Below, in pieces: positions 6,220-46,018 of a stretch of 64,000 nucleotides of DNA. The notes under the pieces were generated by a model that did no database searches, was not told the origin of the DNA, and saw only the letters and a program-made list of their open reading frames with translations. The position numbers and the translations under genes are program-made. Each line of letters starts with the position of its first letter. Within the stretch, counting starts at the first letter, position 1. Location of the stretch: positions 1 through 64,000 of the IMG/VR virus record IMGVR_UViG_3300005613_000002; one strand, given 5' to 3'.

Positions 6220-6618
6220 TTAAAAATTCAAATCTAATTCACCACTTTCATTAAATACGTCTTCACTATAAGTAAATTTAATATTTACATTTAATTGTGT
6301 CTCAGGAATAGGAATTCCATCATCATCAAGATTCCAATTAAACGTAACTTTATCTATTGTAAGTGCTGGTATATATAATGAAACCGTTTTTTTGATTTCC
6401 TGTTCTACTTCTGATGATGTTAATCTATCATTTGGTTCAAAGATATATTTCAATAAATTAGTACCATAGTCTGGTTCATAATATCTTTCACCCTTCTGGG
6501 TTAATAATAATAACAACAAATCAGAACTAAGCGCATCTTTCGTAACACTAGTCATTTGAAACAACTTGTTTGTTGTTACGTCATCAACAATTGGAAATCT
6601 GATATTATATGAATTCAT
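6220..6618 (-). CDS. Baseplate wedge protein, gp25/GPW-like
   Basis: LLLT.KGER...P.YGTNL...IFEP signature; 132 aa. Confidence 0.88.
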   Translation of the reverse strand: MNSYNIRFPIVDDVTTNKLFQMTSVTKDALSSDLLLLLLTQKGERYYEPDYGTNLLKYIFEPNDRLTSSEVEQEIKKTVSLYIPALTIDKVTFNWNLDDDGIPIPETQLNVNIKFTYSEDVFNESGELDLNF

Positions 6619-25924: not shown

Positions 25925-28750
25925 TTATTTATTATTGTGTTTTTCTTTAATTATTTTGATTACATCACTGAGTACTGATTCATTCACATTAGATTCATAA
26001 TCTTCATTGTCCATTACTTTAACTATTTCTTTTCTTTTACCTTCTATTGATGAATAAACATAATCATCAATAGTATCTGGAAAAATTGGGACATATATAT
26101 TAACAGCATTCTTTTGACCAATTCTATGTAAACGATCACTAACTTGGTCATATTCACCAACTGAATATGGTAATGTTGTTACAAATAATTTACTTGCTGC
26201 TGTAAGGGTTAATCCATAATTACAAGTCTGAATACTACCAAAAAATGCTTTAATTACACTATATAAATCTTGAAATTGTTCTACGAGAATTGCACGTTCT
26301 TCAACAGTTTGGTCACCAGTATGTAATGCTGACATTTCACCAAATTTTTCAGCTAATTGATGTAAACTATCTTTAAAATAATCTACCACAACAACCTTTT
26401 CCCCTGTTTCAATAATATTTTCAATTAAATCAATTAAATGTTTAACCTTTATGGATGCCAAATATTGTCTTAATCTAATCATTATTGTTAGTGGATTCCT
26501 TGTAGGGTGTTCAACAAATTCATTAGCTATTCCAGATTCAATTTCATCATATATTCTTTGTTCATTATCAGTCATTTCTAAAATTACTCGCTGATATGTT
26601 TTATCTGGTAAATCAGTTAATACCTCAGATTTTCTTACTCTATGTGTAAATGGTGCAATTTTATGGAATAATTCTTCAAATCTTGTCTCTAACTCATTAG
26701 TAACATAACCCCAACCACCTTCAATATCATATGTCATACCACAATAATACTCATTGAAGTATTTCTTTGTTGCAAAATCTGTTGGTGATATTTGATTTAA
26801 AACAGTATATAACTCATGTGCTCTATTTGGTGCAGGAGTTCCACTTAAAAATATTTTACTTATTTCATTATTTTTAAATATTGTTTTTTTAAACGTTCTA
26901 TTGAAATTCTTAAATGTGTTAGTTTTACCATTTTTTAATTTTTGTGATTCATCACAAATAACAGCATCAATTTTACCAATATTTAATTCTTTCCATTTTT
27001 TATCAAATTTATCTTTATCTTTAGGATTAAAATAATCGTAATTTAATATAATATATTTAGCATCATCAATACTACATTTATTTTTTCTCCATTTTACAAT
27101 ATGTGAATTACTTTTTGTGAATTTAATTACTTCACCATAAAAATTAAATTTTAATGAATTTGGTGTAATTACTACTACTTTCCTAAAATTATTCATTTCA
27201 GCATAAAGTATTGCGCTAAGAGTATTATGAGTTAAAACACAATTATCCATCACATATAAATGGTCGTCAGAGTCAATTGAAATACATTGTGCTTCTTTTT
27301 TACCGACATATTTAACATCAACAATTGCTCGATTTGGTAAATATTTTGTTGGTGCTACAAATGTTTCGATTTTTCTTTTTAATTTAAATGGGATAAATTG
27401 TTGTGGTAACTTTATTGTGATTCTCCAATAAAGTTTTCGTTCATTATTATAATTAACATATTTAGGTTTAATTCTACCAATACCACCCAATGATTGTACT
27501 ATAAATTGTACATCATTAATCAATTGTTTTGATGCTAAAGTTAATTCAATAATTGAATCTTTTCTTGAATGTCCATCAGTATCTAATATCCCTTGTAGTA
27601 TTTCAAGTCTTTGTTCTATTGATGAAAACTTATAATCATCAGGAATAAATTTTGTGTATGAATTACAACCTTTTAAATTATATTTTTTTAATGCTTGATT
27701 AATATAGTTATTTTTACCATCAGCAGTTAAATAATAATCCTTCACTGATTCACCACTTAAAACCAAATTATGTTTTTCTGGAAGTCTTAATTTTATTTCA
27801 TTAATTATTCCTTCATCAATTGATGAAAAACCAATACCATTTTTCACACAAATACAACCATCACCTAACAAACAACCTAAAACATATGGATTTATCTTTA
27901 AAACACGTTCTTCTAACTCAATTGGTTTAACAATTGGTATATACCATTTATTATTGCCATTTTTAAATTGTAACCCACCATCAATTATATCACGTAGCGT
28001 TTTAGTTAAATATGGATTTTTTCTCCAATTACGAATATATGTATTAACATTCCACAAATGTTCATCACATGATTGTGCAGTAGTTCCATCATTAAATGTA
28101 AGTTCATAAATATCTTTTAAACCTTGCGGATAAACACCATTTACTTTTTTTACTTTCCCATCACTACCAATAACTAAATCACCAACATTAACATCACCCA
28201 TTCTAATCCATCCTTTTGGTGACAGTATTTTAGAATCAATCGGATTTGCTTTACCCAATCCCATTTCGTGAGAAATAAGTGTGCTACGAGTGATATTCAT
28301 AAACATTGCAGCAACAATTTGATGTGGATATAGAACAATACCTTCGTTCACAAACGAATGCATTTTTTCAGTATATTTTAGATAATTTGTTTCTAATTCT
28401 AATTTATACTTTACCCAATTTTCTTTTTTTATGTTTAATTCAGCAATAAATTTACGCTTTTCATCTTCATCTTTTTCAATCTTTTTAATTTGATTGATGA
28501 AAATCTTTCGACTATCTTCATTACCAAAATCAAAATGAATTTTGGTTGAATTCTTATATTTTCTAATTAAAAGATATAGCGATGAAGTACTAACTTCCCA
28601 TGCCATATTTATGGGACTCCATTTACGGGTATCCTCTGGTAGGTCTTTTATTCTATTTATTAATTGGTCGTTTATTTGAAATCGTAGAAAATAGTATTTT
28701 CTTCTTCTTATTCTTTCACAATGAACAACAAAAATAGGTGTTTGTTTCAT
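25925..28750 (-). CDS. SNF2/SWI2-family helicase interrupted by an intein
   Basis: HEMGLGK|T Walker A split by the intein; DESQ, SGTP and QxxDRLHRIGQ motifs. Confidence 0.92.
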   Translation of the reverse strand: MKQTPIFVVHCERIRRRKYYFLRFQINDQLINRIKDLPEDTRKWSPINMAWEVSTSSLYLLIRKYKNSTKIHFDFGNEDSRKIFINQIKKIEKDEDEKRKFIAELNIKKENWVKYKLELETNYLKYTEKMHSFVNEGIVLYPHQIVAAMFMNITRSTLISHEMGLGKANPIDSKILSPKGWIRMGDVNVGDLVIGSDGKVKKVNGVYPQGLKDIYELTFNDGTTAQSCDEHLWNVNTYIRNWRKNPYLTKTLRDIIDGGLQFKNGNNKWYIPIVKPIELEERVLKINPYVLGCLLGDGCICVKNGIGFSSIDEGIINEIKLRLPEKHNLVLSGESVKDYYLTADGKNNYINQALKKYNLKGCNSYTKFIPDDYKFSSIEQRLEILQGILDTDGHSRKDSIIELTLASKQLINDVQFIVQSLGGIGRIKPKYVNYNNERKLYWRITIKLPQQFIPFKLKRKIETFVAPTKYLPNRAIVDVKYVGKKEAQCISIDSDDHLYVMDNCVLTHNTLSAILYAEMNNFRKVVVITPNSLKFNFYGEVIKFTKSNSHIVKWRKNKCSIDDAKYIILNYDYFNPKDKDKFDKKWKELNIGKIDAVICDESQKLKNGKTNTFKNFNRTFKKTIFKNNEISKIFLSGTPAPNRAHELYTVLNQISPTDFATKKYFNEYYCGMTYDIEGGWGYVTNELETRFEELFHKIAPFTHRVRKSEVLTDLPDKTYQRVILEMTDNEQRIYDEIESGIANEFVEHPTRNPLTIMIRLRQYLASIKVKHLIDLIENIIETGEKVVVVDYFKDSLHQLAEKFGEMSALHTGDQTVEERAILVEQFQDLYSVIKAFFGSIQTCNYGLTLTAASKLFVTTLPYSVGEYDQVSDRLHRIGQKNAVNIYVPIFPDTIDDYVYSSIEGKRKEIVKVMDNEDYESNVNESVLSDVIKIIKEKHNNK
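27224..28249 (-). mobile_element. 342-aa intein with LAGLIDADG homing endonuclease, class 3 (Ala1, WCT)
   Basis: Begins ANPIDSKIL after GLGK and ends LTHN before Thr+1; block B CDEHLW, block F AQCISI, block G THN; LGCLLGDG and LQGILDTDG helices. Confidence 0.9.
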
Positions 28751-40036: not shown

Positions 40037-41131
40037 TTACATACTAAATTTATCTTGTTTCCTAGCTTTACGTCTTAATTCATTTACTTCTCTAAAAGCA
40101 TTTGGATTAAACGTTTCTTTTTTTACAATCGATACCAAATGATTAAATTCGTTTTCAGTAATAACCTGACCAACATAACCATCATTCTTTAACACATAAC
40201 TTTTTGCTCTTGAAGTACTACTATTCCCCTCAGAATCTAATGTAGCATCAAATGTAAATTCAAGAAGTTCTTGAACTTTTTCATGTACACTTAAAGTAAT
40301 ATTTTCTTTAGTTTTCTTTAATGCTTTTTCCATTAAATCAAGAAAATGTTCACGATTACTTTTTTTCAAGTTATTATATGTATCAGTAAATTCTTGTTTC
40401 GATGTTTTATCTTTCACTTCAGATATAATTGCAAGCGAACCATAACAATCACGAATCATCATATCCCATACTTGTTCGGCATAACTAAACGATGGGAATT
40501 TATCAATAGCAACAATTTCTTCATCAATTAATACTATAATACCAATCAAATTTTTTGGTCTTTCAAAATGAGCAATAAATTGTTCAAGTTTTTCATCATA
40601 CTTTTCGAAATATTTATTCAAATAATTACCAGTACTAGAAACAGTGTCTTTACCCAATTTTTCAATAGCTGGATAAATTCTTGAATAATCACCATTTTCA
40701 CCAATATTATCGAACAACATTTCACGCATACTAACTGGTATCATACGAAATTCTTGAGAATTTCTAAAATGACCTGTTTCAGAACCTTGAACACATCCAG
40801 CATCATGATAAGTAACAGTTTTATTCTTATCAATATAACCACCTTTAATCATTGCATGATTTTGCGCTTTTTGTTTTGTGATAACTGCCATTTGTGTTGG
40901 AACTATCACTTCCTTATTTTCTTTATTAGTCAAATCCATTTGACCATAAGAACTATTACTTGATACCAACGCAGTCAATGGATTAGCAAAACGAGTATCC
41001 AATGAATATTCAGCGTCTGTTGTTAAACAAACAATCTGCATGTTCATAATTGATTGAACAATTATATTTCCATCCACATCCTTAACTGGACGACAACCTT
41101 TTAATAGTTCTGTAAAATCTCTTGTATTCAT
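40037..41131 (-). CDS. ARPP-1 (DUF6569)-like protein
   Basis: Q-N-H...G-C-V-Q-G resembles the ARPP-1 QNR...SCVEQG pattern (from recall); 12-nt gap to the TROVE-like gene. Confidence 0.5.
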   Translation of the reverse strand: MNTRDFTELLKGCRPVKDVDGNIIVQSIMNMQIVCLTTDAEYSLDTRFANPLTALVSSNSSYGQMDLTNKENKEVIVPTQMAVITKQKAQNHAMIKGGYIDKNKTVTYHDAGCVQGSETGHFRNSQEFRMIPVSMREMLFDNIGENGDYSRIYPAIEKLGKDTVSSTGNYLNKYFEKYDEKLEQFIAHFERPKNLIGIIVLIDEEIVAIDKFPSFSYAEQVWDMMIRDCYGSLAIISEVKDKTSKQEFTDTYNNLKKSNREHFLDLMEKALKKTKENITLSVHEKVQELLEFTFDATLDSEGNSSTSRAKSYVLKNDGYVGQVITENEFNHLVSIVKKETFNPNAFREVNELRRKARKQDKFSM

Positions 41132-41143
41132 ATCGCTAAATTT

Positions 41144-42772
41144 TTATGCGTTTACACTTATTTTATTATTTCTCTTAACTGATGATGTTGAAATACTCAA
41201 CACTTGATTTTCCAACCAACGTTTTGTATCAATTTCAAGTAGTCTTGCTTGAATTTGTGGTTGTATTGCTACTGGATTATTAACTGCCATTGTAACAACA
41301 TCTGAACCTAATTTCCTAACATCAGCACCCATTTCAGCACTAGTTATTGGTGAAATTTGATATATTGGGATATTGCTTCCAGATTCATTTCTCCAAATAG
41401 AAATTACCTCATTAGTTAAACCATCATATGAATTTTCATATCCATCAGTTAAGATAAAAATTGCATCATATGGTTTTGTTGCATCTTCTTTCTTCAACAA
41501 CCAAATAAATGTGCTTGCCAAATCAGTAGTCTCACCCTCAGTTTCACAAAAATTAATATTCTTTGTTGACTTAGTTAATACCCTTGCAGTAAAATCTGCA
41601 ATTGCTCTTGGTGTATTTTTTGATTCTACCTTGTTCCCATTCATTGAATTACTTCTATCTACAATAACACCAATATTTTTATAATAGAAATCTTTAATTT
41701 TTTTCTTTTCAGCAAGATTATCAATAGCTATTTTTAATTCTTCTGTCCAACCATTTTCATAACCTGTTTTATATAATGCAAGAAAATCAGTAGCTTTTTC
41801 AACATTTACATGTTTTTCAACACCCAATTTTGCTGTTGATTTAGTTTGACGAACTTGTTGATTAATTGATGTCACTTCAACATTTTTTCTGATTAAAGCC
41901 TTTGTTGCTTCTCTCTGAATTTTTGTTGACCACATTGAATGATATTGTGGGTGTTTCGTGCTTGAAACCAAACCTATCAATATTTCTTCAGGAACTGTTT
42001 TAATTCCATTAATATCGGTTTTTGCTTTTTGATAATCACTTAATAATGGAAAATCAGCCACATTATAATTTAAATTATTATCCATTTTAAATAAAAACAT
42101 CAATAATTTAAATGCACGAAGTGAATCGCCATTAAAATATTTCAAAATTAAATTATTTGCAATAGACATTTCTTTAGCATCACTAAACAAACCATTATTA
42201 ACTGCTTGTTTACTAGCAATTGAAATTAAAATGCTTGTCTTTTTTTGACCATAGACATGTTTTAATATTTCAGCAATTTTATTACGATATTTCAATGAAT
42301 AAAATTCAATATTTGATTGACCCCAAATATATCCAAGTATAATTTTCCTTGTTCTTTCGTTGTTAACTTTTAATTTTTTCAAATCCATAAACAAACGAAG
42401 CACATATGGAATACCATTTTCACCAAGATTATTCAATGCAGTTAGAACTGCTTTATCACAAACCCCATTATCATACCAATCAATTGGATTAACAATATTA
42501 CATGCACCACCTTTTAACGTGTTTTTAAACTCATTTAACAACACTTCAGATATATAACGACCAGTTGCACCCTTTTGAGTTGCAATAATCAATGGTAGCT
42601 CCTTTGAGAGATTATATTGACTATTAATCTGTGCACGTATAGCATTCAATTGTTCATCTCTACTGTGATAGTAAGTGGCACTACTCTTAGCACCAGAAGC
42701 AATTGTTAAGCCGTCTATCAAAGACTGTTTGATAGAACTAAGCATTCTCTGTGTTAATACCAAATTTTCCAT
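41144..42772 (-). CDS. TROVE/Ro60-like protein (helical N-terminal region plus C-terminal vWA domain)
   Basis: vWA MIDAS: VIVDRSNSM, TDLA, ILTDG; about 380-aa helical N-terminal region; size and architecture fit Ro60-like proteins. Confidence 0.65.
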   Translation of the reverse strand: MENLVLTQRMLSSIKQSLIDGLTIASGAKSSATYYHSRDEQLNAIRAQINSQYNLSKELPLIIATQKGATGRYISEVLLNEFKNTLKGGACNIVNPIDWYDNGVCDKAVLTALNNLGENGIPYVLRLFMDLKKLKVNNERTRKIILGYIWGQSNIEFYSLKYRNKIAEILKHVYGQKKTSILISIASKQAVNNGLFSDAKEMSIANNLILKYFNGDSLRAFKLLMFLFKMDNNLNYNVADFPLLSDYQKAKTDINGIKTVPEEILIGLVSSTKHPQYHSMWSTKIQREATKALIRKNVEVTSINQQVRQTKSTAKLGVEKHVNVEKATDFLALYKTGYENGWTEELKIAIDNLAEKKKIKDFYYKNIGVIVDRSNSMNGNKVESKNTPRAIADFTARVLTKSTKNINFCETEGETTDLASTFIWLLKKEDATKPYDAIFILTDGYENSYDGLTNEVISIWRNESGSNIPIYQISPITSAEMGADVRKLGSDVVTMAVNNPVAIQPQIQARLLEIDTKRWLENQVLSISTSSVKRNNKISVNA

Positions 42773-42859
42773 AGTTACATTTTAAACTTTAATTATTAAT
42801 AAAAATAACATTTACGAACAGTATTATACGTATTCGATTAAATAATGTTACAAAAATTC

Positions 42860-42920
42860 AAAAAAAAAAATGAGCAAAAATTTCAACGTAATTAAACATC
42901 AAATTTCCCGCCCATTGCTC
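42860..42920 (-). terminator. Long hairpin plus U11 tract between the ncRNA array and the TROVE-like gene
   Basis: Minus strand GAGCAA...AAAUUUGAUG/CGUUGAAAUUU...UUGCUC then AUUUUUUUUUUU. Confidence 0.55.
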
Positions 42921-42956
42921 TTTGTTTAAAAAAAACATTACTTCCTTACAAATAAA

Positions 42957-43047
42957 GGAAAGAAGTGTGATTGTATTTTTTGTACGTTTGTGTCGCCACT
43001 ATCTGGGCGACAAATTTCAATTTACTGTAAACACAATAAGTTCTTCC
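42957..43047 (-). ncRNA. Y-RNA-like element D (conserved stem plus GC hairpin, no tRNA fold)
   Basis: GGAAGAAC.UAUUGUGUUUACAGUAA...; AUUGUGUUU pairs with AAAUACAAU; inner UGUCGCC/GGCGACA hairpin. Confidence 0.6.
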
Positions 43048-43176
43048 ATAAAACAAATTTTTTGAAAAAAATCAATATTTTACTATTGATAAAAACCATT
43101 TTTAACCTACACATCATTTTACTGATGATTCAAATGTTAGGTGGGGTGATGTTTTTATAAACATCCAAAAAACTTT

Positions 43177-43329
43177 GGGAATATTTTTAAAGTATTTGTT
43201 GCTTTTTGTGTGCAAGTTTTAACGACTTGTGACTTTACCGTTTGTCTATATCCCCAATTTTATTTTTTATTGGTGGGGATAGAAGGATTCGAACCTTCAA
43301 TAATTACTGTAAACACTTATAGTTTTCCC
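43177..43329 (-). ncRNA. Y-RNA-like element C: circularly permuted tRNA (T arm-acceptor 3'-CCA-spacer-acceptor 5'-D arm-anticodon arm) inside the conserved stem
   Basis: GAAGG-UUCGAAU-CCUUC-UAUCCCC-ACCA (43298-43271) precedes GGGGAUA-UA-GAC...GUC-A-CAAGU-CGUUAAA-ACUUG (43255-43213). Confidence 0.8.
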
Positions 43330-43467
43330 TTAATATCTTTAACCTATTGAACTGTGTGTTTATGTGAGGCACTACTTGGAATGTAATTTATCAGTTTTAC
43401 TAGCCTTTTCATGTTCATTCAATTTAGGAATCCGTTTCCATTTTGTTTGGATTCTTAGGTCAAATTG

Positions 43468-43602
43468 TGGGGAGAATCGGATTCGAACCGATAATCTATT
43501 GATTTCAACTCAATTGCTTTAACCTATTACTGTAAACACTAATAGTTCTCTTTTAAAGAGTAATGAGATAGTATTATTTGTTTTTGTTTTTGCTATCTCC
43601 CC
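43468..43602 (-). ncRNA. tRNA-like element B with the conserved stem inserted in the D-arm (anticodon-loop triplet UGA)
   Basis: 7-bp GGGGAGA/UCUCCCC acceptor, AUUGA/UCAAU anticodon stem, AUCGG-UUCGAAU-CCGAU T arm; about 62-nt insertion after C11. Confidence 0.75.
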
Positions 43603-43835
43603 ATTTATTAAATCCTGTAATTTTAATTAATACTTTATGTTTCTCTCTTTTCAGTAGCGTACATATCTCGTTAATCCTAAATTACAGAATTATTTTTTTA
43701 AATCTAAGCACCATGCCATTTCATAGGTATTAAAACCGCCAAAATTGGGGGTCTGCTTAAATTTATTTCATTATTTTAAAGAACTTTAAGCCAGTTACGT
43801 TTACATAAAGTAAAGAGGCTTTACTGACTATCATG

Positions 43836-43923
43836 TAGCGGGAGAGGGATTCGAACCCCCGTTAAACCTTATTCAGGACTCCGTGCTTATGAGACAGGTG
43901 AGATACCGCTTCTCCATCCCGCA
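43836..43923 (-). tRNA. tRNA with CAU anticodon (Met or Ile2) and a 20-nt variable arm; no encoded CCA
   Basis: UGCGGGA/UCCCGCU acceptor, GAG/CUC D stem, CUCAUAA loop, GGGGG-UUCGAAU-CCCUC T arm. Confidence 0.75.
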
Positions 43924-43937
43924 ATATATTTTTTATA

Positions 43938-44064
43938 AAAGGATAGTTTATTTGTTATATGTTGTTTTTACAAAGTTGGATTTGAACCAACGGCATACTG
44001 CTTATAAGGCAATCACTCTAACCGACTGAGTTATTTGTTACTGTAATAACAATTAGTTTCCTTT
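43938..44064 (-). ncRNA. Element A: tRNA-Ile(UAU)-like cloverleaf (43967-44040) whose acceptor stem is extended by the conserved stem
   Basis: ACUC/GAGU D stem, AUUGC-CUUAUAA-GCAGU, GUUGG-UUCAAAU-CCAAC; outer AAAGGA/UCCUUU and UUGUUAU/AUAACAA pairs. Confidence 0.8.
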
Positions 44065-44108
44065 AATATTTTCATCATTTTATATGAACGTTTTGTCCTA
44101 AGACGATA

Positions 44109-44138
44109 CAAATGTAAACATTATTTTTTAATATACAA
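44109..44138 (-). promoter_or_regulatory. Bacteroidota-type promoter TTG-N19-TACATTTG upstream of the ncRNA array
   Basis: Exact consensus and spacing about 45 nt before element A; a GTATTTATA motif also lies at 44177-44185. Confidence 0.65.
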
Positions 44139-44224
44139 CACTTTTTATAAAAAAATTTAAATTATACGTCTGGGATTATAAATACATAAATAATTTCAAA
44201 AAGTTTATAAATTTTAATAAATTT

Positions 44225-46018
44225 TTATTCTTTTTTTGTAACCACTTGATTCTTACGTTCTTCGATTAGTCTATCTCTAATACTAATCTGTTTTGAATAT
44301 ATATCATCAGGGTCAATAAAATCATCTTCGGAAACCTCAACAATTGGTTCAGTATTGTTTTTTAGTTCTACTTTCTCATTTTCAATATTAATTGACTCAA
44401 CATCTGACTTAACAGTTTCATCCTTAATAAGATTAGCACCTTCTTTAATTGGTTCATTTTCTTTTTTTATCTTATTATATTGCTCCAACATATCATTTAG
44501 AGGCTCATTTACTGGTTCATTTACAGTATCATTATTTGCTTTACCAATAATTTCACCTTCAGTAATTTGACTTGCAGCAACATGTACTTTACTCATATTA
44601 CTTTCTAATTTATCAATATCTGTAGAATCATGATGTTTTTTACCTTGATTTAATTTATCGTATTTATATCTATCATCTTCAATTCTAATTTCCATTGTAT
44701 CATTATTGAATATACAATTTTCAAAAGTCTGTCCATCAGCAGCAAACCTAGCTTTAATAATTCTAATATTAGCTAATTGTGATACTTTTTGGTCTGGAGT
44801 TTTTGCAACACTCATAAAAAAGTGAGCTTTTTGTATTCTTTTAATACTACCACCACTTTGATGTGCTTCAACATATTCAGCATCAAAACCTGAACGATTA
44901 GATTGTATTGCAGTCCATGCTGGAATATCGAAATCAGAAGATAATGTCTCAAAACCTTTAATAATGGCAAGTTCAGCTTCATTCCTGTCTGCGGTTTTTT
45001 TATGTGATTCAAGACAATCAAGATAATCTAACACCAACATATCGAATTTATAACCAAATTTTTTCTCATGCGATAACATCCAATTACGTACATCAGTAAT
45101 TGTTGTATTTTCTTGACTAAATTTCTTGATTATTAATTTACCTCTGTTTGTTTCTTTAGCAACACCATGTATGATTTCTTTAATTTTAGCATTTTCAATA
45201 TCATCATCCATTTTACTTAATGCGACTTTTGACCATATTGTATAATGCTTACGTTTTACCTGATCTTTAGTATCTTCAAATATGATTTGTGCAACATTAT
45301 ATTCACCAAGATATGCTGTATTTGCAATTTTCGTTAAAATTGTTGTTTTACCAACACCACTAGGTGTAAGTATTACACCAATTTCACCTTTACCTAATCC
45401 ACCACCAGTTAATGAATCTATAACTTCAATACCTGTTGGTATTGTTTTCCTAAATTCTTTTCTCAATGTTCTATCAATATTATCGAAAATTTCCTCACAA
45501 TCATCACCAACTTCACCAATTAATGATACTTTTTGAAATTTTTCTTCAATTGTAGTTACTGTATGTTTATTTTTTATTTCACCAGATTTGGTTTTATCGA
45601 TAATAAATTCACCTAATTTTCTATATTCTTGTTGTTTAATGAAATTATTGGTAGCTTTTTGTACTACATCACCATCATTTAATGTTTTTCTATTAATAAC
45701 ATTTTCATTCCATAATTCAACCTGTTTTAAAACACCAAACAATACTTCACTTTCAATTTCATTATTTGGTGCTTTATATCTATTTATTGCTTGGCGTATA
45801 CTCTTATTTTGATAATTTGGGACTTTTTCAAATTCTCTATAAAATTCAATAATTATAATAAAAAATCTTTTAATGTTTGGGTCATCGAAATATTCAATTG
45901 CTAATGATGGTAATACTCTTTCAGCGAATTCTGGTTCAACCAATAATTGCCAAATAAGTTTCAATTGAAATTCATGCCCTAAATATGAAGTAATTGTATT
46001 TTCTGATGTTTTACTCAT
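44225..46018 (-). CDS. Replicative DnaB-like helicase (T4 gp41-like)
   Basis: TG...D.LTGGG...GEI.VI..PSGVGKTT, VLDYLD, WTAIQSNR, K.RF. Confidence 0.92.
   Translation of the reverse strand: MSKTSENTITSYLGHEFQLKLIWQLLVEPEFAERVLPSLAIEYFDDPNIKRFFIIIIEFYREFEKVPNYQNKSIRQAINRYKAPNNEIESEVLFGVLKQVELWNENVINRKTLNDGDVVQKATNNFIKQQEYRKLGEFIIDKTKSGEIKNKHTVTTIEEKFQKVSLIGEVGDDCEEIFDNIDRTLRKEFRKTIPTGIEVIDSLTGGGLGKGEIGVILTPSGVGKTTILTKIANTAYLGEYNVAQIIFEDTKDQVKRKHYTIWSKVALSKMDDDIENAKIKEIIHGVAKETNRGKLIIKKFSQENTTITDVRNWMLSHEKKFGYKFDMLVLDYLDCLESHKKTADRNEAELAIIKGFETLSSDFDIPAWTAIQSNRSGFDAEYVEAHQSGGSIKRIQKAHFFMSVAKTPDQKVSQLANIRIIKARFAADGQTFENCIFNNDTMEIRIEDDRYKYDKLNQGKKHHDSTDIDKLESNMSKVHVAASQITEGEIIGKANNDTVNEPVNEPLNDMLEQYNKIKKENEPIKEGANLIKDETVKSDVESINIENEKVELKNNTEPIVEVSEDDFIDPDDIYSKQISIRDRLIEERKNQVVTKKE

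What the first reader, a model, noticed from the sequence alone, without database searches (positions are those of the whole stretch)
40037..44138. Candidate new system: phage TROVE/Ro60-like + ARPP-like operon preceded by an array of Y-like RNAs with differently permuted tRNA folds
Seen directly: four elements (43938-44064, 43468-43602, 43177-43329, 42957-43047) share a 5' strand of the form purine-rich-AACU-W-W-W-(R/U)-UGUU(U/AU)-ACAGUAA, invariant UUACAGUAA at 44038, 43527, 43304 and 43022. Each pairs with an A-rich 3' strand preceded by an A5 run, forming a closing helix, an internal loop and a second helix. The stem joins a tRNA at the acceptor end (A), the D-arm (B) and the variable loop with permutation (C), or carries a plain hairpin (D). 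The array has its own promoter and terminator and lies immediately upstream of a helical+vWA gene. Established: Ro60/TROVE proteins bind a bulged stem of Y RNAs encoded next to them, and bacterial YrlA RNAs are tRNA mimics. Inference: this is a divergent Ro60-type RNP using one protein-binding handle on several tRNA-shaped cargos, as decoys or for repair against tRNA-targeting defences; alternatively the stem is a splicing/processing signal. The motif differs from the canonical Y RNA Ro-site as I recall it.
Basis: partly seen in the sequence, partly recalled or inferred. Interest (0 to 1): 0.93.

Follow-up and report, generated by a model that had tools for sequence, protein, structure and literature searches.

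The report
Divergent Ro60-like RNP with tRNA-shaped RNAs
A huge phage encodes a very divergent relative of the Ro60 RNA-binding ring, paired with an ARPP enzyme-like protein, just downstream of small RNAs that graft one conserved stem onto tRNA-shaped bodies at different points; the same module also sits inside tRNA gene arrays of many bacteria and appears undescribed.

Summary
Four RNAs on the minus strand (43938-44064, 43468-43602, 43177-43329, 42958-43047) share one "handle": helix P1, an internal loop containing AACU, helix P2, then an invariant U(A/U/C)CAGUAA. The handle joins a tRNA-like body at the acceptor end (A), inside the D loop (B) or at the variable region of a circularly permuted tRNA (C), or it carries a plain hairpin (D). 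Covariation in about 76 related phage loci supports every helix.

The 542-aa gene has no Pfam TROVE hit. A confident model (pLDDT 91.6) matches only Ro60 structures (TM 0.52), with an intact vWA MIDAS motif. An ARPP-1 gene follows it in 65/65 phage loci and 55/57 cellular loci, and one relative is a fusion of the two.

Distant relatives in Planctomycetota, Myxococcota, Bacteroidota and other phyla carry the same 5' consensus GGGAACU-N-U(A/U)CAG directly upstream. They lie inside co-oriented tRNA arrays (391 tRNAs on the gene strand, none opposite). The cargo anticodons are hypervariable.

The best reading is a new, widespread variant of the Ro60/Y-RNA (YrlA-like) ribonucleoprotein linked to tRNA biology. 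Protein binding to the handle and the biological function are inferred, not shown.

The parts
43938..44064 (-). Element A. The handle (P1 AAAGGA:UCCUUU, internal loop AACUAA, P2 UUGUUAU:AUAACAA, then UACAGUAA) runs into the short acceptor helix of a tRNA-like body with anticodon UAU.
   Evidence: Sequence. tRNA called by ARAGORN at 43967-44040 and by Rfam at 61.8 bits. In the class A alignment of 30 orthologues, P1, P2 and the tRNA arms show compensatory changes. Model R1 hit at 43939-44063, 35.5 bits.
43835..43923 (-). Plain tRNA-Met(CAU) without a handle. It is a conserved member of the array and carries an 18-nt variable-region insertion in this phage.
   Evidence: ARAGORN and Rfam. A CAU tRNA is present in all 17 related loci scanned.
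43468..43602 (-). Element B. A tRNA-like RNA (acceptor GGGGAGA:UCUCCCC, anticodon loop GUUGAAA) with the handle inserted in the D loop as a hairpin capped at P1.
   Evidence: Partial Rfam tRNA hit at 43476-43531, 28.8 bits. Alignment A6 with the native fold is 99.2% paired, has 9 compensatory pairs, and 0 of 500 shuffles reach it.
43177..43329 (-). Element C. A circularly permuted tRNA-like RNA: handle 5' strand, T arm, acceptor 3' strand plus ACCA, 15-nt linker, acceptor 5' strand, D arm, anticodon arm, A/C-rich linker, handle 3' strand.
   Evidence: Sub-threshold permuted-tmRNA hit over the T arm, acceptor and CCA. The 40-sequence alignment A3 is 97.4% paired, 23 of 36 pairs show compensatory changes, and 0 of 500 shuffles reach it. 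R1 scores 131.9 bits.
42958..43047 (-). Element D. The handle carries only a GC-rich hairpin (P3 GUA:UAC, then UUG:CAA, then GUCGCC:GGCGAC). It is the element closest to the gene.
   Evidence: RNAalifold on 23 orthologues predicts 27 pairs, 10 of them with compensatory changes. R1 full-length hit at 41.9 bits, E 4e-6.
42858..42925 (-). Terminator-like hairpin followed by U11, at the end of the RNA array.
   Evidence: strand folding gives -21.3 kcal/mol, z -5.6, with 0 of 200 shuffles as stable. Analogous GC stems with U runs are seen in related loci.
42823..42851 (-). Sigma-70-like promoter match (GTAACA-17-TATAAT) ahead of the Ro60-like gene.
   Evidence: Consensus scan with 10 of 12 matches. 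This is a consensus match only.
41144..42772 (-). Gene for a 542-aa divergent Ro60-like protein: an all-alpha HEAT-type ring (residues 1-356) plus a vWA domain (366-529) with MIDAS residues D372-x-S374-x-S376 and D443.
   Evidence: No Pfam, PHROG, NCBIfam or PDB sequence hit. AF2 model with pLDDT 91.6 and pTM 0.89. Foldseek top 12 PDB hits are all Ro60, E 2.5e-7, TM 0.52-0.53 over about 576 columns, with the next hit at E 0.02. BFVD top hits include Ro-like and TROVE proteins. Conserved MIDAS motif.
40037..41131 (-). Gene for a 364-aa ARPP-1 family protein, the obligate downstream partner.
   Evidence: Pfam PF20208, E 2.9e-15, 56.8 bits against a cutoff of 27. Adjacent in 65/65 phage loci and 55/57 cellular loci that have room downstream. 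Fused to the Ro-like protein in P0260. Invariant C113, Q115 and H92.

Best explanation
The locus encodes a ribonucleoprotein of the Ro60/Y-RNA kind in a very divergent form. The 542-aa protein is a Ro60-like HEAT ring with a vWA cap. The RNAs encoded just upstream on the same strand are its Y-RNA-like partners.

Their shared handle is P1, an internal loop with (A/G)ACU, P2, and then the U(A/U/C)CAG(UAA) junction. I infer that this handle is the protein-binding module, analogous to the bulged stem of Y RNAs. The variable cargo is a tRNA-shaped module, or in classes D and E a plain hairpin. The handle displays the cargo in different orientations: acceptor end blocked (A), elbow or D loop occupied (B), or acceptor CCA end and anticodon both free on a permuted body (C, which is YrlA-like).

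The ARPP protein, which has conserved Cys, Gln and His residues, is inferred to be the catalytic or effector partner of the ring. The whole module is inferred to work on or with tRNAs, for example in surveillance, repair or protection of tRNAs, or as baits for tRNA-targeting enzymes. This fits its embedding in tRNA arrays and the hypervariable anticodons of the cargo.

Shown by computation: the protein fold, the RNA structures, the covariation, the gene-RNA-ARPP linkage and the tRNA-array context. Inferred: that the protein binds the handle, that the RNAs are stable, the role of ARPP, and the biological purpose.
For: Protein:
- The high-confidence model matches only Ro60 structures, full length.
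- The MIDAS motif is conserved across 48 relatives down to 21% identity.

RNA:
- Every helix of classes A to D is supported by compensatory changes.
- P1 and P2 still pair (95.8% and 82.2%) with changes on both sides at all 16 positions in a cross-phylum, model-fitted alignment. Slid controls pair at 49% or less.

Linkage:
- The handle occurs only next to the gene. This holds in the window, in 76 related loci upstream on the gene strand, in all 8 true handles among 120 loci that share the 14-mer, and in a 26%-identical 462-kb phage.
- In 25-30%-identical cellular homologues the same GGGAACU..U(A/U)CAG consensus lies directly upstream.

Parallels with known Ro60 systems:
- Y RNAs lie upstream of Ro60 on the same strand.
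- YrlA has the order T arm, acceptor-like stem-loop, D arm.
- M. smegmatis YrlA is cut by RNase P and CCA-tailed (PMC4201824).
- Phage Ro60 binds upstream Yrl RNAs (PMC12135203).

ARPP: it forms an obligate pair with the Ro-like gene and is sometimes fused to it.

Against simple tRNA precursors:
- Classes D and E have no tRNA cargo.
- 14 of 40 class C loops lack U33, and some acceptor stems are closed by 4-5-nt loops without CCA.
- The cargo anticodon is the most variable column, while the neighbouring tRNA-Met is invariant.

tRNA link: 391 tRNA genes in 62 cellular loci are all on the gene strand.
Against: - No sequence-level membership in TROVE. Pfam finds nothing at E <= 1 in 48 members, and the family profile finds no Ro60 chain in the PDB.
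- TM 0.52 indicates the same fold but is not a close match.
- The handle lacks the published Ro-binding motifs, and no Y-RNA family hit was obtained.
- Binding, RNA accumulation and RNA ends are untested. There are no expression data.
- A terminator and a promoter lie between the array and the gene in the window. In L263 ORFs separate them by 1.5-3 kb. Co-transcription is therefore not required.
- The cross-phylum alignment was fitted to the model, which biases the pair counts.
- No PNPase, RtcB or RNA ligase partner was seen within 28-58 kb of the window.
Confidence: 0.55

Rival explanations
1. The handle is a processing or splicing signal. A protein-assisted machinery, possibly the Ro-like/ARPP pair itself, excises it. 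That would release or re-join functional tRNAs from leader/trailer (A), D-loop intron (B) and permuted (C) precursors. This would be analogous to bulge-helix-bulge processing of archaeal and algal intron-containing, split and permuted tRNAs.
For: - The handle sits exactly where introns, leaders and permutation junctions sit.
- Most class C genes encode NCCA after the acceptor 3' strand, as expected if the ends are freed.
- In class B the tRNA 5' segment is complementary to the insert, like an exon-guide pairing, with two compensatory changes.
- ARPP has conserved Cys, Gln and His residues suggesting catalysis (PMC9503650).
- Class A bodies score as good tRNAs.
Against: - Classes D and E carry the handle with no tRNA to mature.
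- The handle geometry (P1 of 5-7 bp, 4-nt and 5-7-nt loop strands, P2 of 8-11 bp) is not a 3-4-3 bulge-helix-bulge.
- Cargo anticodons differ freely between orthologues and often lack U33.
- Some class C acceptors are closed by short loops without CCA.
- Class A acceptor helices are only 4-5 bp with conserved mismatches.
- No splicing endonuclease or RNA ligase is seen nearby.
- The class B guide-like helix is reached by 27-29 of 500 shuffles.
Confidence: 0.15
2. The handle elements are cis-regulatory leaders of the Ro-like/ARPP operon. They would act as protein-binding autoregulatory sites or as tRNA-status sensors that control termination, not as trans-acting RNP partners.
For: - They are always upstream and co-oriented.
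- Element D lies next to a strong terminator hairpin.
- The 3' strand of its P1 can alternatively pair with a downstream GAAGAAG-like repeat seen in related loci.
Against: - There are up to five elements per locus, each with elaborate tRNA-like cargo.
- In the window a promoter-like site follows the terminator.
- In L263 the elements are separated from the gene by ORFs.
- The alternative hairpin is weak in the window (z -1.1).
Confidence: 0.1
3. The handles are generic host-nuclease (for example RNase III or RNase E) processing stems of a phage or array tRNA transcript, and the neighbouring Ro-like gene is unrelated to them.
For: Long imperfect stems flanking tRNAs are common processing sites in phage tRNA clusters (general knowledge). 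Ordinary tRNAs lie in the same arrays.
Against: - The invariant single-stranded or non-canonical motifs (ACU, U(A/U)CAG) are conserved from phages to Planctomycetota and Myxococcota, despite 25% protein identity and GC content ranging from 27% to over 60%.
- Only the one to five RNAs nearest the gene carry the handle, not the dozens of other array tRNAs.
- The handle is strictly linked to the gene pair.
Confidence: 0.07

Closest known systems
Bacterial and phage Ro60 (Rsr)/Y RNA ribonucleoproteins, especially YrlA-type tRNA-mimicking Y RNAs (Salmonella rsr-yrlBA-rtcBA, M. smegmatis, mycobacteriophages, Thermus phage phiLo)
   Same: - A ring-plus-vWA protein fold.
- Small structured RNAs encoded upstream on the same strand.
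- The 5' and 3' ends form a stem with an internal loop and a conserved 5'-strand motif.
- A tRNA-like module ordered T arm, acceptor-like stem-loop, D arm (class C).
- A 7-bp acceptor with CCA, as in M. smegmatis YrlA, which is cut by RNase P (PMC4201824; PMC12135203).
   Different: - The protein is not detected by the Pfam TROVE model or by a family-profile search of PDB sequences.
- The RNA motif is (A/G)ACU..U(A/U)CAG, not GGUCCGA, GNCGAAN0-1G or CGAA, and there is no Rfam hit.
- Class C keeps a full anticodon arm, and the handle leaves from the variable region.
- The same handle is also grafted at the acceptor end, at the D loop and, in Myxococcota, between the D and anticodon arms.
- The partner gene is ARPP, not RtcB or PNPase.
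- The module is embedded in tRNA arrays.
Circularly permuted tRNA genes (Cyanidioschyzon merolae, some archaea) and archaeal intron-containing or split tRNAs processed at bulge-helix-bulge motifs
   Same: Class C has the gene order 3' half, linker, 5' half. The insertions sit at non-canonical tRNA positions (D loop, variable region, acceptor end).
   Different: - There is no bulge-helix-bulge geometry.
- The context is bacterial and phage, with no splicing endonuclease or ligase seen.
- The same stem also occurs on non-tRNA hairpins.
- The cargo anticodons are not conserved.
Two-piece (permuted) tmRNA
   Same: The local order T arm, acceptor 3' strand, CCA, linker, acceptor 5' strand. Rfam gives a partial tmRNA_permuted match of 23.8 bits.
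   Different: The match is below the gathering score of 47. There is no tag reading frame or pseudoknots. A D arm and an anticodon arm follow instead.
[quoted passage not shown]
   Same: The cellular relatives of the gene pair lie inside dense co-oriented arrays of 10-38 tRNA genes. The literature notes RNA-processing and translation genes near such arrays.
   Different: A Ro60-like/ARPP pair with handle RNAs was not found described as an array component in the papers searched.
ARPP-containing conflict systems (ARG-centred; ARPP with HIRAN, WYL or deacetylase partners; PMC9503650)
   Same: The same ARPP-1 domain with a conserved Cys and Gln.
   Different: The partner here is a Ro60-like ring with RNAs, which is not among the neighbourhoods listed in that paper.

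Membership tests
Ro60/TROVE protein family | Toroid of HEAT-like alpha-helical repeats closed by a C-terminal vWA domain | tested here: met
   AF2 model with pLDDT 91.6 and pTM 0.89. Foldseek top 12 PDB hits are all Ro60, E 2.5e-7, TM 0.52-0.53, about 576 aligned columns, with the next hit at E 0.02. BFVD top hits include Ro-like and TROVE proteins.
Ro60/TROVE protein family | vWA MIDAS motif (DxSxS ... D) | tested here: met
   D372, S374, S376 and D443 are invariant or nearly so in 48 relatives.
Ro60/TROVE protein family | Sequence match to the Pfam TROVE model or to solved Ro60 sequences | tested here: not met
   No TROVE hit at E <= 1 in any of 48 members. phmmer and the family profile find no Ro60 chain in the PDB.
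Ro60/TROVE protein family | Binds Y RNA on the outer surface and single-stranded 3' ends in the central hole | not testable with these tools
   Needs biochemistry or an experimental or AF3-type complex structure.
Y RNA / YrlA | Match to a curated Y-RNA-type covariance model | tested here: not met
   cmscan of 42600-44400 at E <= 10 gives only tRNA, a sub-threshold permuted tmRNA and chance hits. The gathering-score scan of 18 distant loci finds no Y-RNA family.
Y RNA / YrlA | Conserved Ro-binding motif on the 5' strand (GGUCCGA in animals; GNCGAAN0-1G or CGAA in bacteria and phages) | tested here: not met
   The 5' strands read GGGAAAACU..GUGUUUACAGUAA and similar. The published motifs are from PMC4201824 and PMC12135203.
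Y RNA / YrlA | 5' and 3' ends pair into a stem interrupted by an internal loop or bulge | tested here: met
   P1, internal loop and P2 with compensatory changes.
Y RNA / YrlA | tRNA-like module ordered T arm, acceptor-like stem-loop, D arm | tested here: met
   Class C: the T, acceptor and D helices are 99-100% paired with covariation, and the GGUUCRAnUCC T loop and GG of the D loop are conserved.
Y RNA / YrlA | Encoded next to, upstream of and co-oriented with the Ro60 gene | tested here: met
   All model hits are on the gene strand.
Permuted or intron-containing tRNA genes processed at bulge-helix-bulge motifs | 3-nt bulge, 4-bp helix, 3-nt bulge at the exon-intron or permutation junction | tested here: not met
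   The handle geometry is P1 of 5-7 bp, loop strands of 4 nt and 5-7 nt, and P2 of 8-11 bp.
Permuted or intron-containing tRNA genes processed at bulge-helix-bulge motifs | The cargo is a conserved, decoding-competent tRNA (fixed anticodon, U33) | tested here: not met
   14 anticodons in 30 class A orthologues. 13 anticodons in 40 class C, of which 14 of 40 lack U33.
Two-piece tmRNA | Rfam tmRNA_permuted score at or above gathering, and a tag reading frame | tested here: not met
   23.8 bits against a gathering score of 47, covering model positions 36-95 only. ARAGORN reports no tmRNA in the window.
ARPP-1 (PF20208) | Pfam score above the gathering threshold | tested here: met
   56.8 bits against 27, E 2.9e-15. 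Orthologues in distant loci score E 3e-19 to 4e-38.
ARPP-1 (PF20208) | Absolutely conserved Cys and Gln (as described in PMC9503650) | tested here: met
   C113 and Q115 (plus H92, Q90 and C229) are invariant in 5 sequences at 23-33% identity.

The most novel reading that the evidence does not exclude
This is a previously unrecognised, ancient Ro60-like/ARPP ribonucleoprotein that serves as a dedicated accessory of tRNA arrays in bacteria and huge phages. One protein-binding handle displays tRNA-shaped baits whose anticodons diversify rapidly. The ring and its ARPP enzyme could then sense, sequester or repair damage done to tRNAs by anticodon nucleases or by enzymes that modify the tRNA end. 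A rarer alternative is that it is the first protein-guided maturation pathway for permuted or intron-bearing tRNAs in bacteria.
Probability: 0.3. Interest if true: 0.92.

Novelty: new variant of a known kind. Interest (0 to 1): 0.82.

Why it matters
What the tRNA-like modules of bacterial Y RNAs are for is still open. Here the same question appears in a sharper form.

- A large protein family (307 clusters at 50% identity) is invisible to the TROVE profile.
- It is strictly paired with a putative enzyme, ARPP.
- It is physically embedded in tRNA arrays.
- It is served by RNAs that present tRNA bodies from several defined attachment points, with fast-changing anticodons.

This gives testable handles on Ro60 biology, on the function of ARPP, on why tRNA arrays spread on mobile elements and huge phages, and on tRNA-centred phage-host conflict. 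It also adds a new, widely distributed structured-RNA motif and natural examples of permuted and insertion-bearing tRNA scaffolds in bacteria and phages. Cultivable carriers exist, for example Stieleria magnilauensis, Novipirellula sp. SH528, Rhodopirellula spp. and Minicystis rosea, so genetics is feasible.

Tried and rejected
- Sequence searches of the 542-aa protein against Pfam, PHROGs, NCBIfam and PDB sequences, including a 48-member profile, found nothing useful. Only structure comparison was informative.
It became useful only after filtering for the full 5' strand.
- Strict exact-pair searches and duplex-energy z-scores against mononucleotide shuffles did not discriminate handles in GC-rich cellular loci. 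The recurring bipartite duplex geometry and the model-based alignment were used instead.
- The look-up of encoding contigs for distant homologues mostly gave short contigs. Only L198 was informative.
- The idea of clade-specific co-evolution between the motif variant and the protein was dropped. UACAG and UUCAG co-occur within single loci, and only L198 and one L247 element use UUCCG.
- The class B alternative helix is reported as suggestive only.
- Reading class C as a chance junction of two tRNA genes was rejected. Its acceptor strands pair with each other at 98.9% with covariation at all 7 pairs, and the flanks form the handle. Partial R1 hits covering model positions 31-106 in tRNA arrays are such dimer junctions and were ignored.
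- No promoter upstream of the array could be confirmed.

Full report
**Context.** The window coincides with the first 64 kb of a 321.6-kb viral contig from IMG/VR (L062, 100% identical, with the same coordinates). GC content is about 28%. All genes around the finding are on the minus strand. A DnaB-like helicase lies at 44225-46018. A 1.1-kb non-coding stretch follows, then ORFs of 542 aa (41144-42772) and 364 aa (40037-41131).

**Observation.** TTACAGTAA occurs at 43022, 43304, 43527 and 44038, all on the minus strand, plus one unrelated site at 2459. Shuffles expect 1.47 matches in the whole window on both strands. The extended 5'-strand pattern is confined to the array. ARAGORN and Rfam find a tRNA-Ile(UAU) at 43967-44040 and a tRNA-Met(CAU) at 43835-43923. 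They also find a partial tRNA at 43476-43531 and a T-arm/acceptor/CCA segment resembling permuted tmRNA at 43247-43298.

**The RNAs across relatives.** The 542-aa protein has several hundred close relatives (60-85% identity) on contigs of up to 320-365 kb. I fetched 76 IMG/VR loci. The motif recurs upstream of the gene, on the gene strand, in nearly all of them. The elements fall into five classes:
- A: the handle continues from the acceptor end of a tRNA-like body.
- B: the handle is a capped hairpin inside the D loop.
- C: a permuted tRNA.
- D: the handle plus a GC hairpin, next to the gene.
- E: the handle plus a small hairpin. This class is absent or degenerate in the window.

**Structure and covariation.**
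- Class C (40 sequences) is 97.4% paired on the proposed structure. Compensatory changes occur at 23 of 36 pairs, no shuffle of 500 reaches it, and slid controls pair at 55% or less.
- Class B in its native fold is 99.2% paired with 9 compensatory pairs.
- Classes A, D and E give the same P1 and P2 with RNAalifold.

The handle is therefore built as follows. P1 is GGGAA:UUCCC or an equivalent. An internal loop follows, whose 5' side is (A)AACU. P2 is NNAAAGUGUUU:AAAUACUUUNN, with G:U to A:U and U:A to A:U exchanges. Next comes an invariant (A/U/C)CAGUAA. In classes D, E and part of A the GUAA of that motif pairs with UUAC to form P3, which leaves ACA facing an A/C-rich strand. A covariance model built from class C recovers C, D and A full length in the window. 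It recovers B only weakly (21.3 bits, E 0.04-0.11) and finds nothing else in 64 kb.

**The cargo.** The T loop, the GG of the D loop, U8 and the other tRNA landmarks are conserved. The anticodon is not.
- Orthologous class A elements carry 14 different anticodons among 30, including UCA and UUA.
- Class C carries 13 among 40, and 14 of those 40 lack U33.
- Class B carries 7 among 14.

An anticodon position is the single most variable well-occupied column in both the class A and class C alignments. The handle-free tRNA-Met next door keeps CAU everywhere. Most class C genes encode NCCA followed by an A-rich linker, but a few close the acceptor with a 4-5-nt loop.

**The protein.** No sequence method recognises it. 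A first model built from close homologues (pLDDT 76.5) already matched only Ro60 structures. An exhaustive search gave 307 representative clusters. A 48-sequence alignment down to 21% identity produced a model with pLDDT 91.6 and pTM 0.89. The 12 PDB matches of that model with E <= 0.001 are all Ro60: Xenopus and human Ro60, D. radiodurans Rsr and Thermus phage phiLo Ro60. The best E is 2.5e-7, TM is 0.52-0.53 over about 576 columns, and the next hit has E 0.02. The best viral predicted-structure matches include "Ro-like RNA binding protein" and TROVE proteins. The vWA MIDAS motif (DxSxS...D) is conserved. I therefore class the protein as a structural member of the Ro60 fold that fails the sequence definition of TROVE.

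**The partner.** The next gene is ARPP-1 (E 2.9e-15). An ARPP gene directly follows the Ro-like gene in 65/65 phage loci with enough downstream sequence. The same holds in 55/57 cellular loci, counting ten cases that my distance rule rejected because their stop-to-stop ORFs begin upstream of the Ro-like match end. Pfam confirms it in Planctomycetota, Myxococcota, a deltaproteobacterium and a metagenomic clade. One relative (P0260, 884 aa) is a fusion of the two. The Cys and Gln said to define ARPP (PMC9503650) are invariant here. That paper lists other ARPP neighbourhoods but not this one.

**Distant relatives and tRNA arrays.** A scan of one genome per species found 62 loci at 25-30% identity. 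They come from Planctomycetota, Myxococcota, Bacteroidota, deltaproteobacteria, Gemmatimonadota, a gammaproteobacterium and some archaeal bins. In these 480 kb ARAGORN finds 391 tRNA genes, every one on the strand of the Ro-like gene. Sixteen loci hold 10-38 tRNAs. The pair is therefore an accessory of long tRNA arrays (compare PMC8421152, PMC4758250).

Directly upstream of the gene, one to three RNAs carry the same 5' consensus, GGGAACU-N4-5-G(Y)NNN-U(A/U)CAG, in completely different sequence backgrounds. They have the same bipartite P1-loop-P2 pairing geometry.
- In Stieleria, Rhodopirellula and Novipirellula, a tRNA-like RNA has UUACAG as its own acceptor 5' strand, followed by a hairpin-type element. 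Across nine planctomycete sequence variants of this RNA the anticodon is CUU in six, UUU in one and UAG in two. The 3:70 position is never Watson-Crick.
- In Myxococcota the permuted tRNA is opened between the D arm and the anticodon arm.
- A metagenomic clade (L198) has three elements using UUCCG in place of UUCAG, two of them permuted.
- The only GenBank phage with a homologue is an unannotated 462-kb uncultured phage, and it has the handles too.

In a model-fitted cross-phylum alignment P1 is 95.8% paired and P2 82.2% paired, with changes on both sides at all 16 pairs. Slid controls pair at 49% or less. The caveat is that this alignment was fitted to the structure.

**Interpretation.** The arrangement reproduces the logic of Ro60/Y-RNA systems. 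These features are described for bacteria and phages (PMC4201824; PMC12135203):
- a ring protein;
- upstream co-oriented small RNAs whose ends form an interrupted stem with a conserved 5'-strand motif;
- a tRNA-like module ordered T arm, acceptor-like stem-loop, D arm.

I therefore take the handle to be the protein-binding module and the tRNA-shaped parts to be functional cargo. Binding itself is inference.

The main rival is that the handle is a processing or splicing signal. Several findings weaken it:
- classes D and E have no tRNA cargo;
- the geometry is not bulge-helix-bulge;
- anticodons are non-conserved and often lack U33;
- some acceptors are closed by loops;
- no endonuclease or ligase gene is nearby.

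It is not excluded. ARPP is an uncharacterised putative enzyme, most class C genes encode CCA, and class B shows a guide-like complementarity, though this is only suggestive. Cis-regulatory and generic-nuclease readings fit fewer facts.

**Novelty.** Rfam has no family for the handle. Pfam has no family for the protein. Full-text searches found no description of a Ro60-like/ARPP pair, of these RNAs, or of their link with tRNA arrays. That is absence within the library searched, not proof. I rate this a new variant of a known kind: a Ro60/Y-RNA-type RNP with a new protein family, a new RNA motif, a new partner and a new genomic context.

**Limits.** There are no expression or binding data. The promoter of the array is not identified. 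TM 0.52 shows the same fold, not functional equivalence. Exclusivity of the handle was tested only in the window and in fetched loci, not in whole genomes.

Noticed in passing
window 43335-43462 (-): A block of about 125 nt between elements B and C (ACCUAAGAAUCC..GGAUUC..UGAAUGAACAUGAAAAGGCU..) is conserved in 8 related phage loci and is probably another small RNA. The fold in the window is not exceptional (z -1.4).
   Followed up: partly
window 43785-43832 (-): A conserved hairpin (CAGU-AAAGCCUCUU..-ACUG) lies just after tRNA-Met and is present in 6 related loci. Function unknown.
   Followed up: partly
L008:1330-1375, L014:3340-3385 and 26 other related loci (not in the window): A third array motif, AUUCCCNG-UUGUCCCUGUGGCAAC-ACAAACUU-CNGGG, has a covarying outer stem. 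It is a candidate structured RNA of these phages.
   Followed up: no
window 43835-43923 (-): The tRNA-Met(CAU) of this phage is 89 nt long because of an 18-nt insertion in the variable region. Most relatives have a 72-76-nt version.
   Followed up: no
window 43468-43602 (-), class B generally: tRNA nucleotides 4-10 (GAGAUAG) are complementary to the 3' strand of the handle (CUAUCUC). This would compete with the acceptor stem and with P2. There are two compensatory changes (L015, L053), but 27-29 of 500 shuffles do as well.
   Followed up: partly
L237:139-577 and 6302-6520: A 204-kb contig binned as Bacteroidales and carrying a distant Ro-like gene also has a GOLLD RNA (165 bits) and a group I intron within 4 kb, among tRNAs.
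   Followed up: no
window 25925-28750 (-): An SNF2-family helicase ORF is interrupted by a LAGLIDADG homing-endonuclease-like domain, in an intein-like arrangement.
   Followed up: no
L212:7046-9379: In Stieleria magnilauensis a 777-aa HIT + PLD-like + ResIII/helicase protein directly follows the Ro-like/ARPP pair. It may be a further component in Planctomycetota.
   Followed up: no
L201 (JBAZIW010000001.1, 362,763 bp) = L032: A huge-phage contig of this group is deposited as a scaffold of a 'Candidatus Paceibacterota' MAG. This is a likely mis-binning or a host hint.
   Followed up: no
L204-L226 (Planctomycetota), RNA just upstream of the gene: Position 3:70 of the acceptor-like helix is never Watson-Crick (A.G, U.C, C.C or A.A) although both sides change. 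This suggests a required non-canonical pair within the UUNCAG motif.
   Followed up: partly
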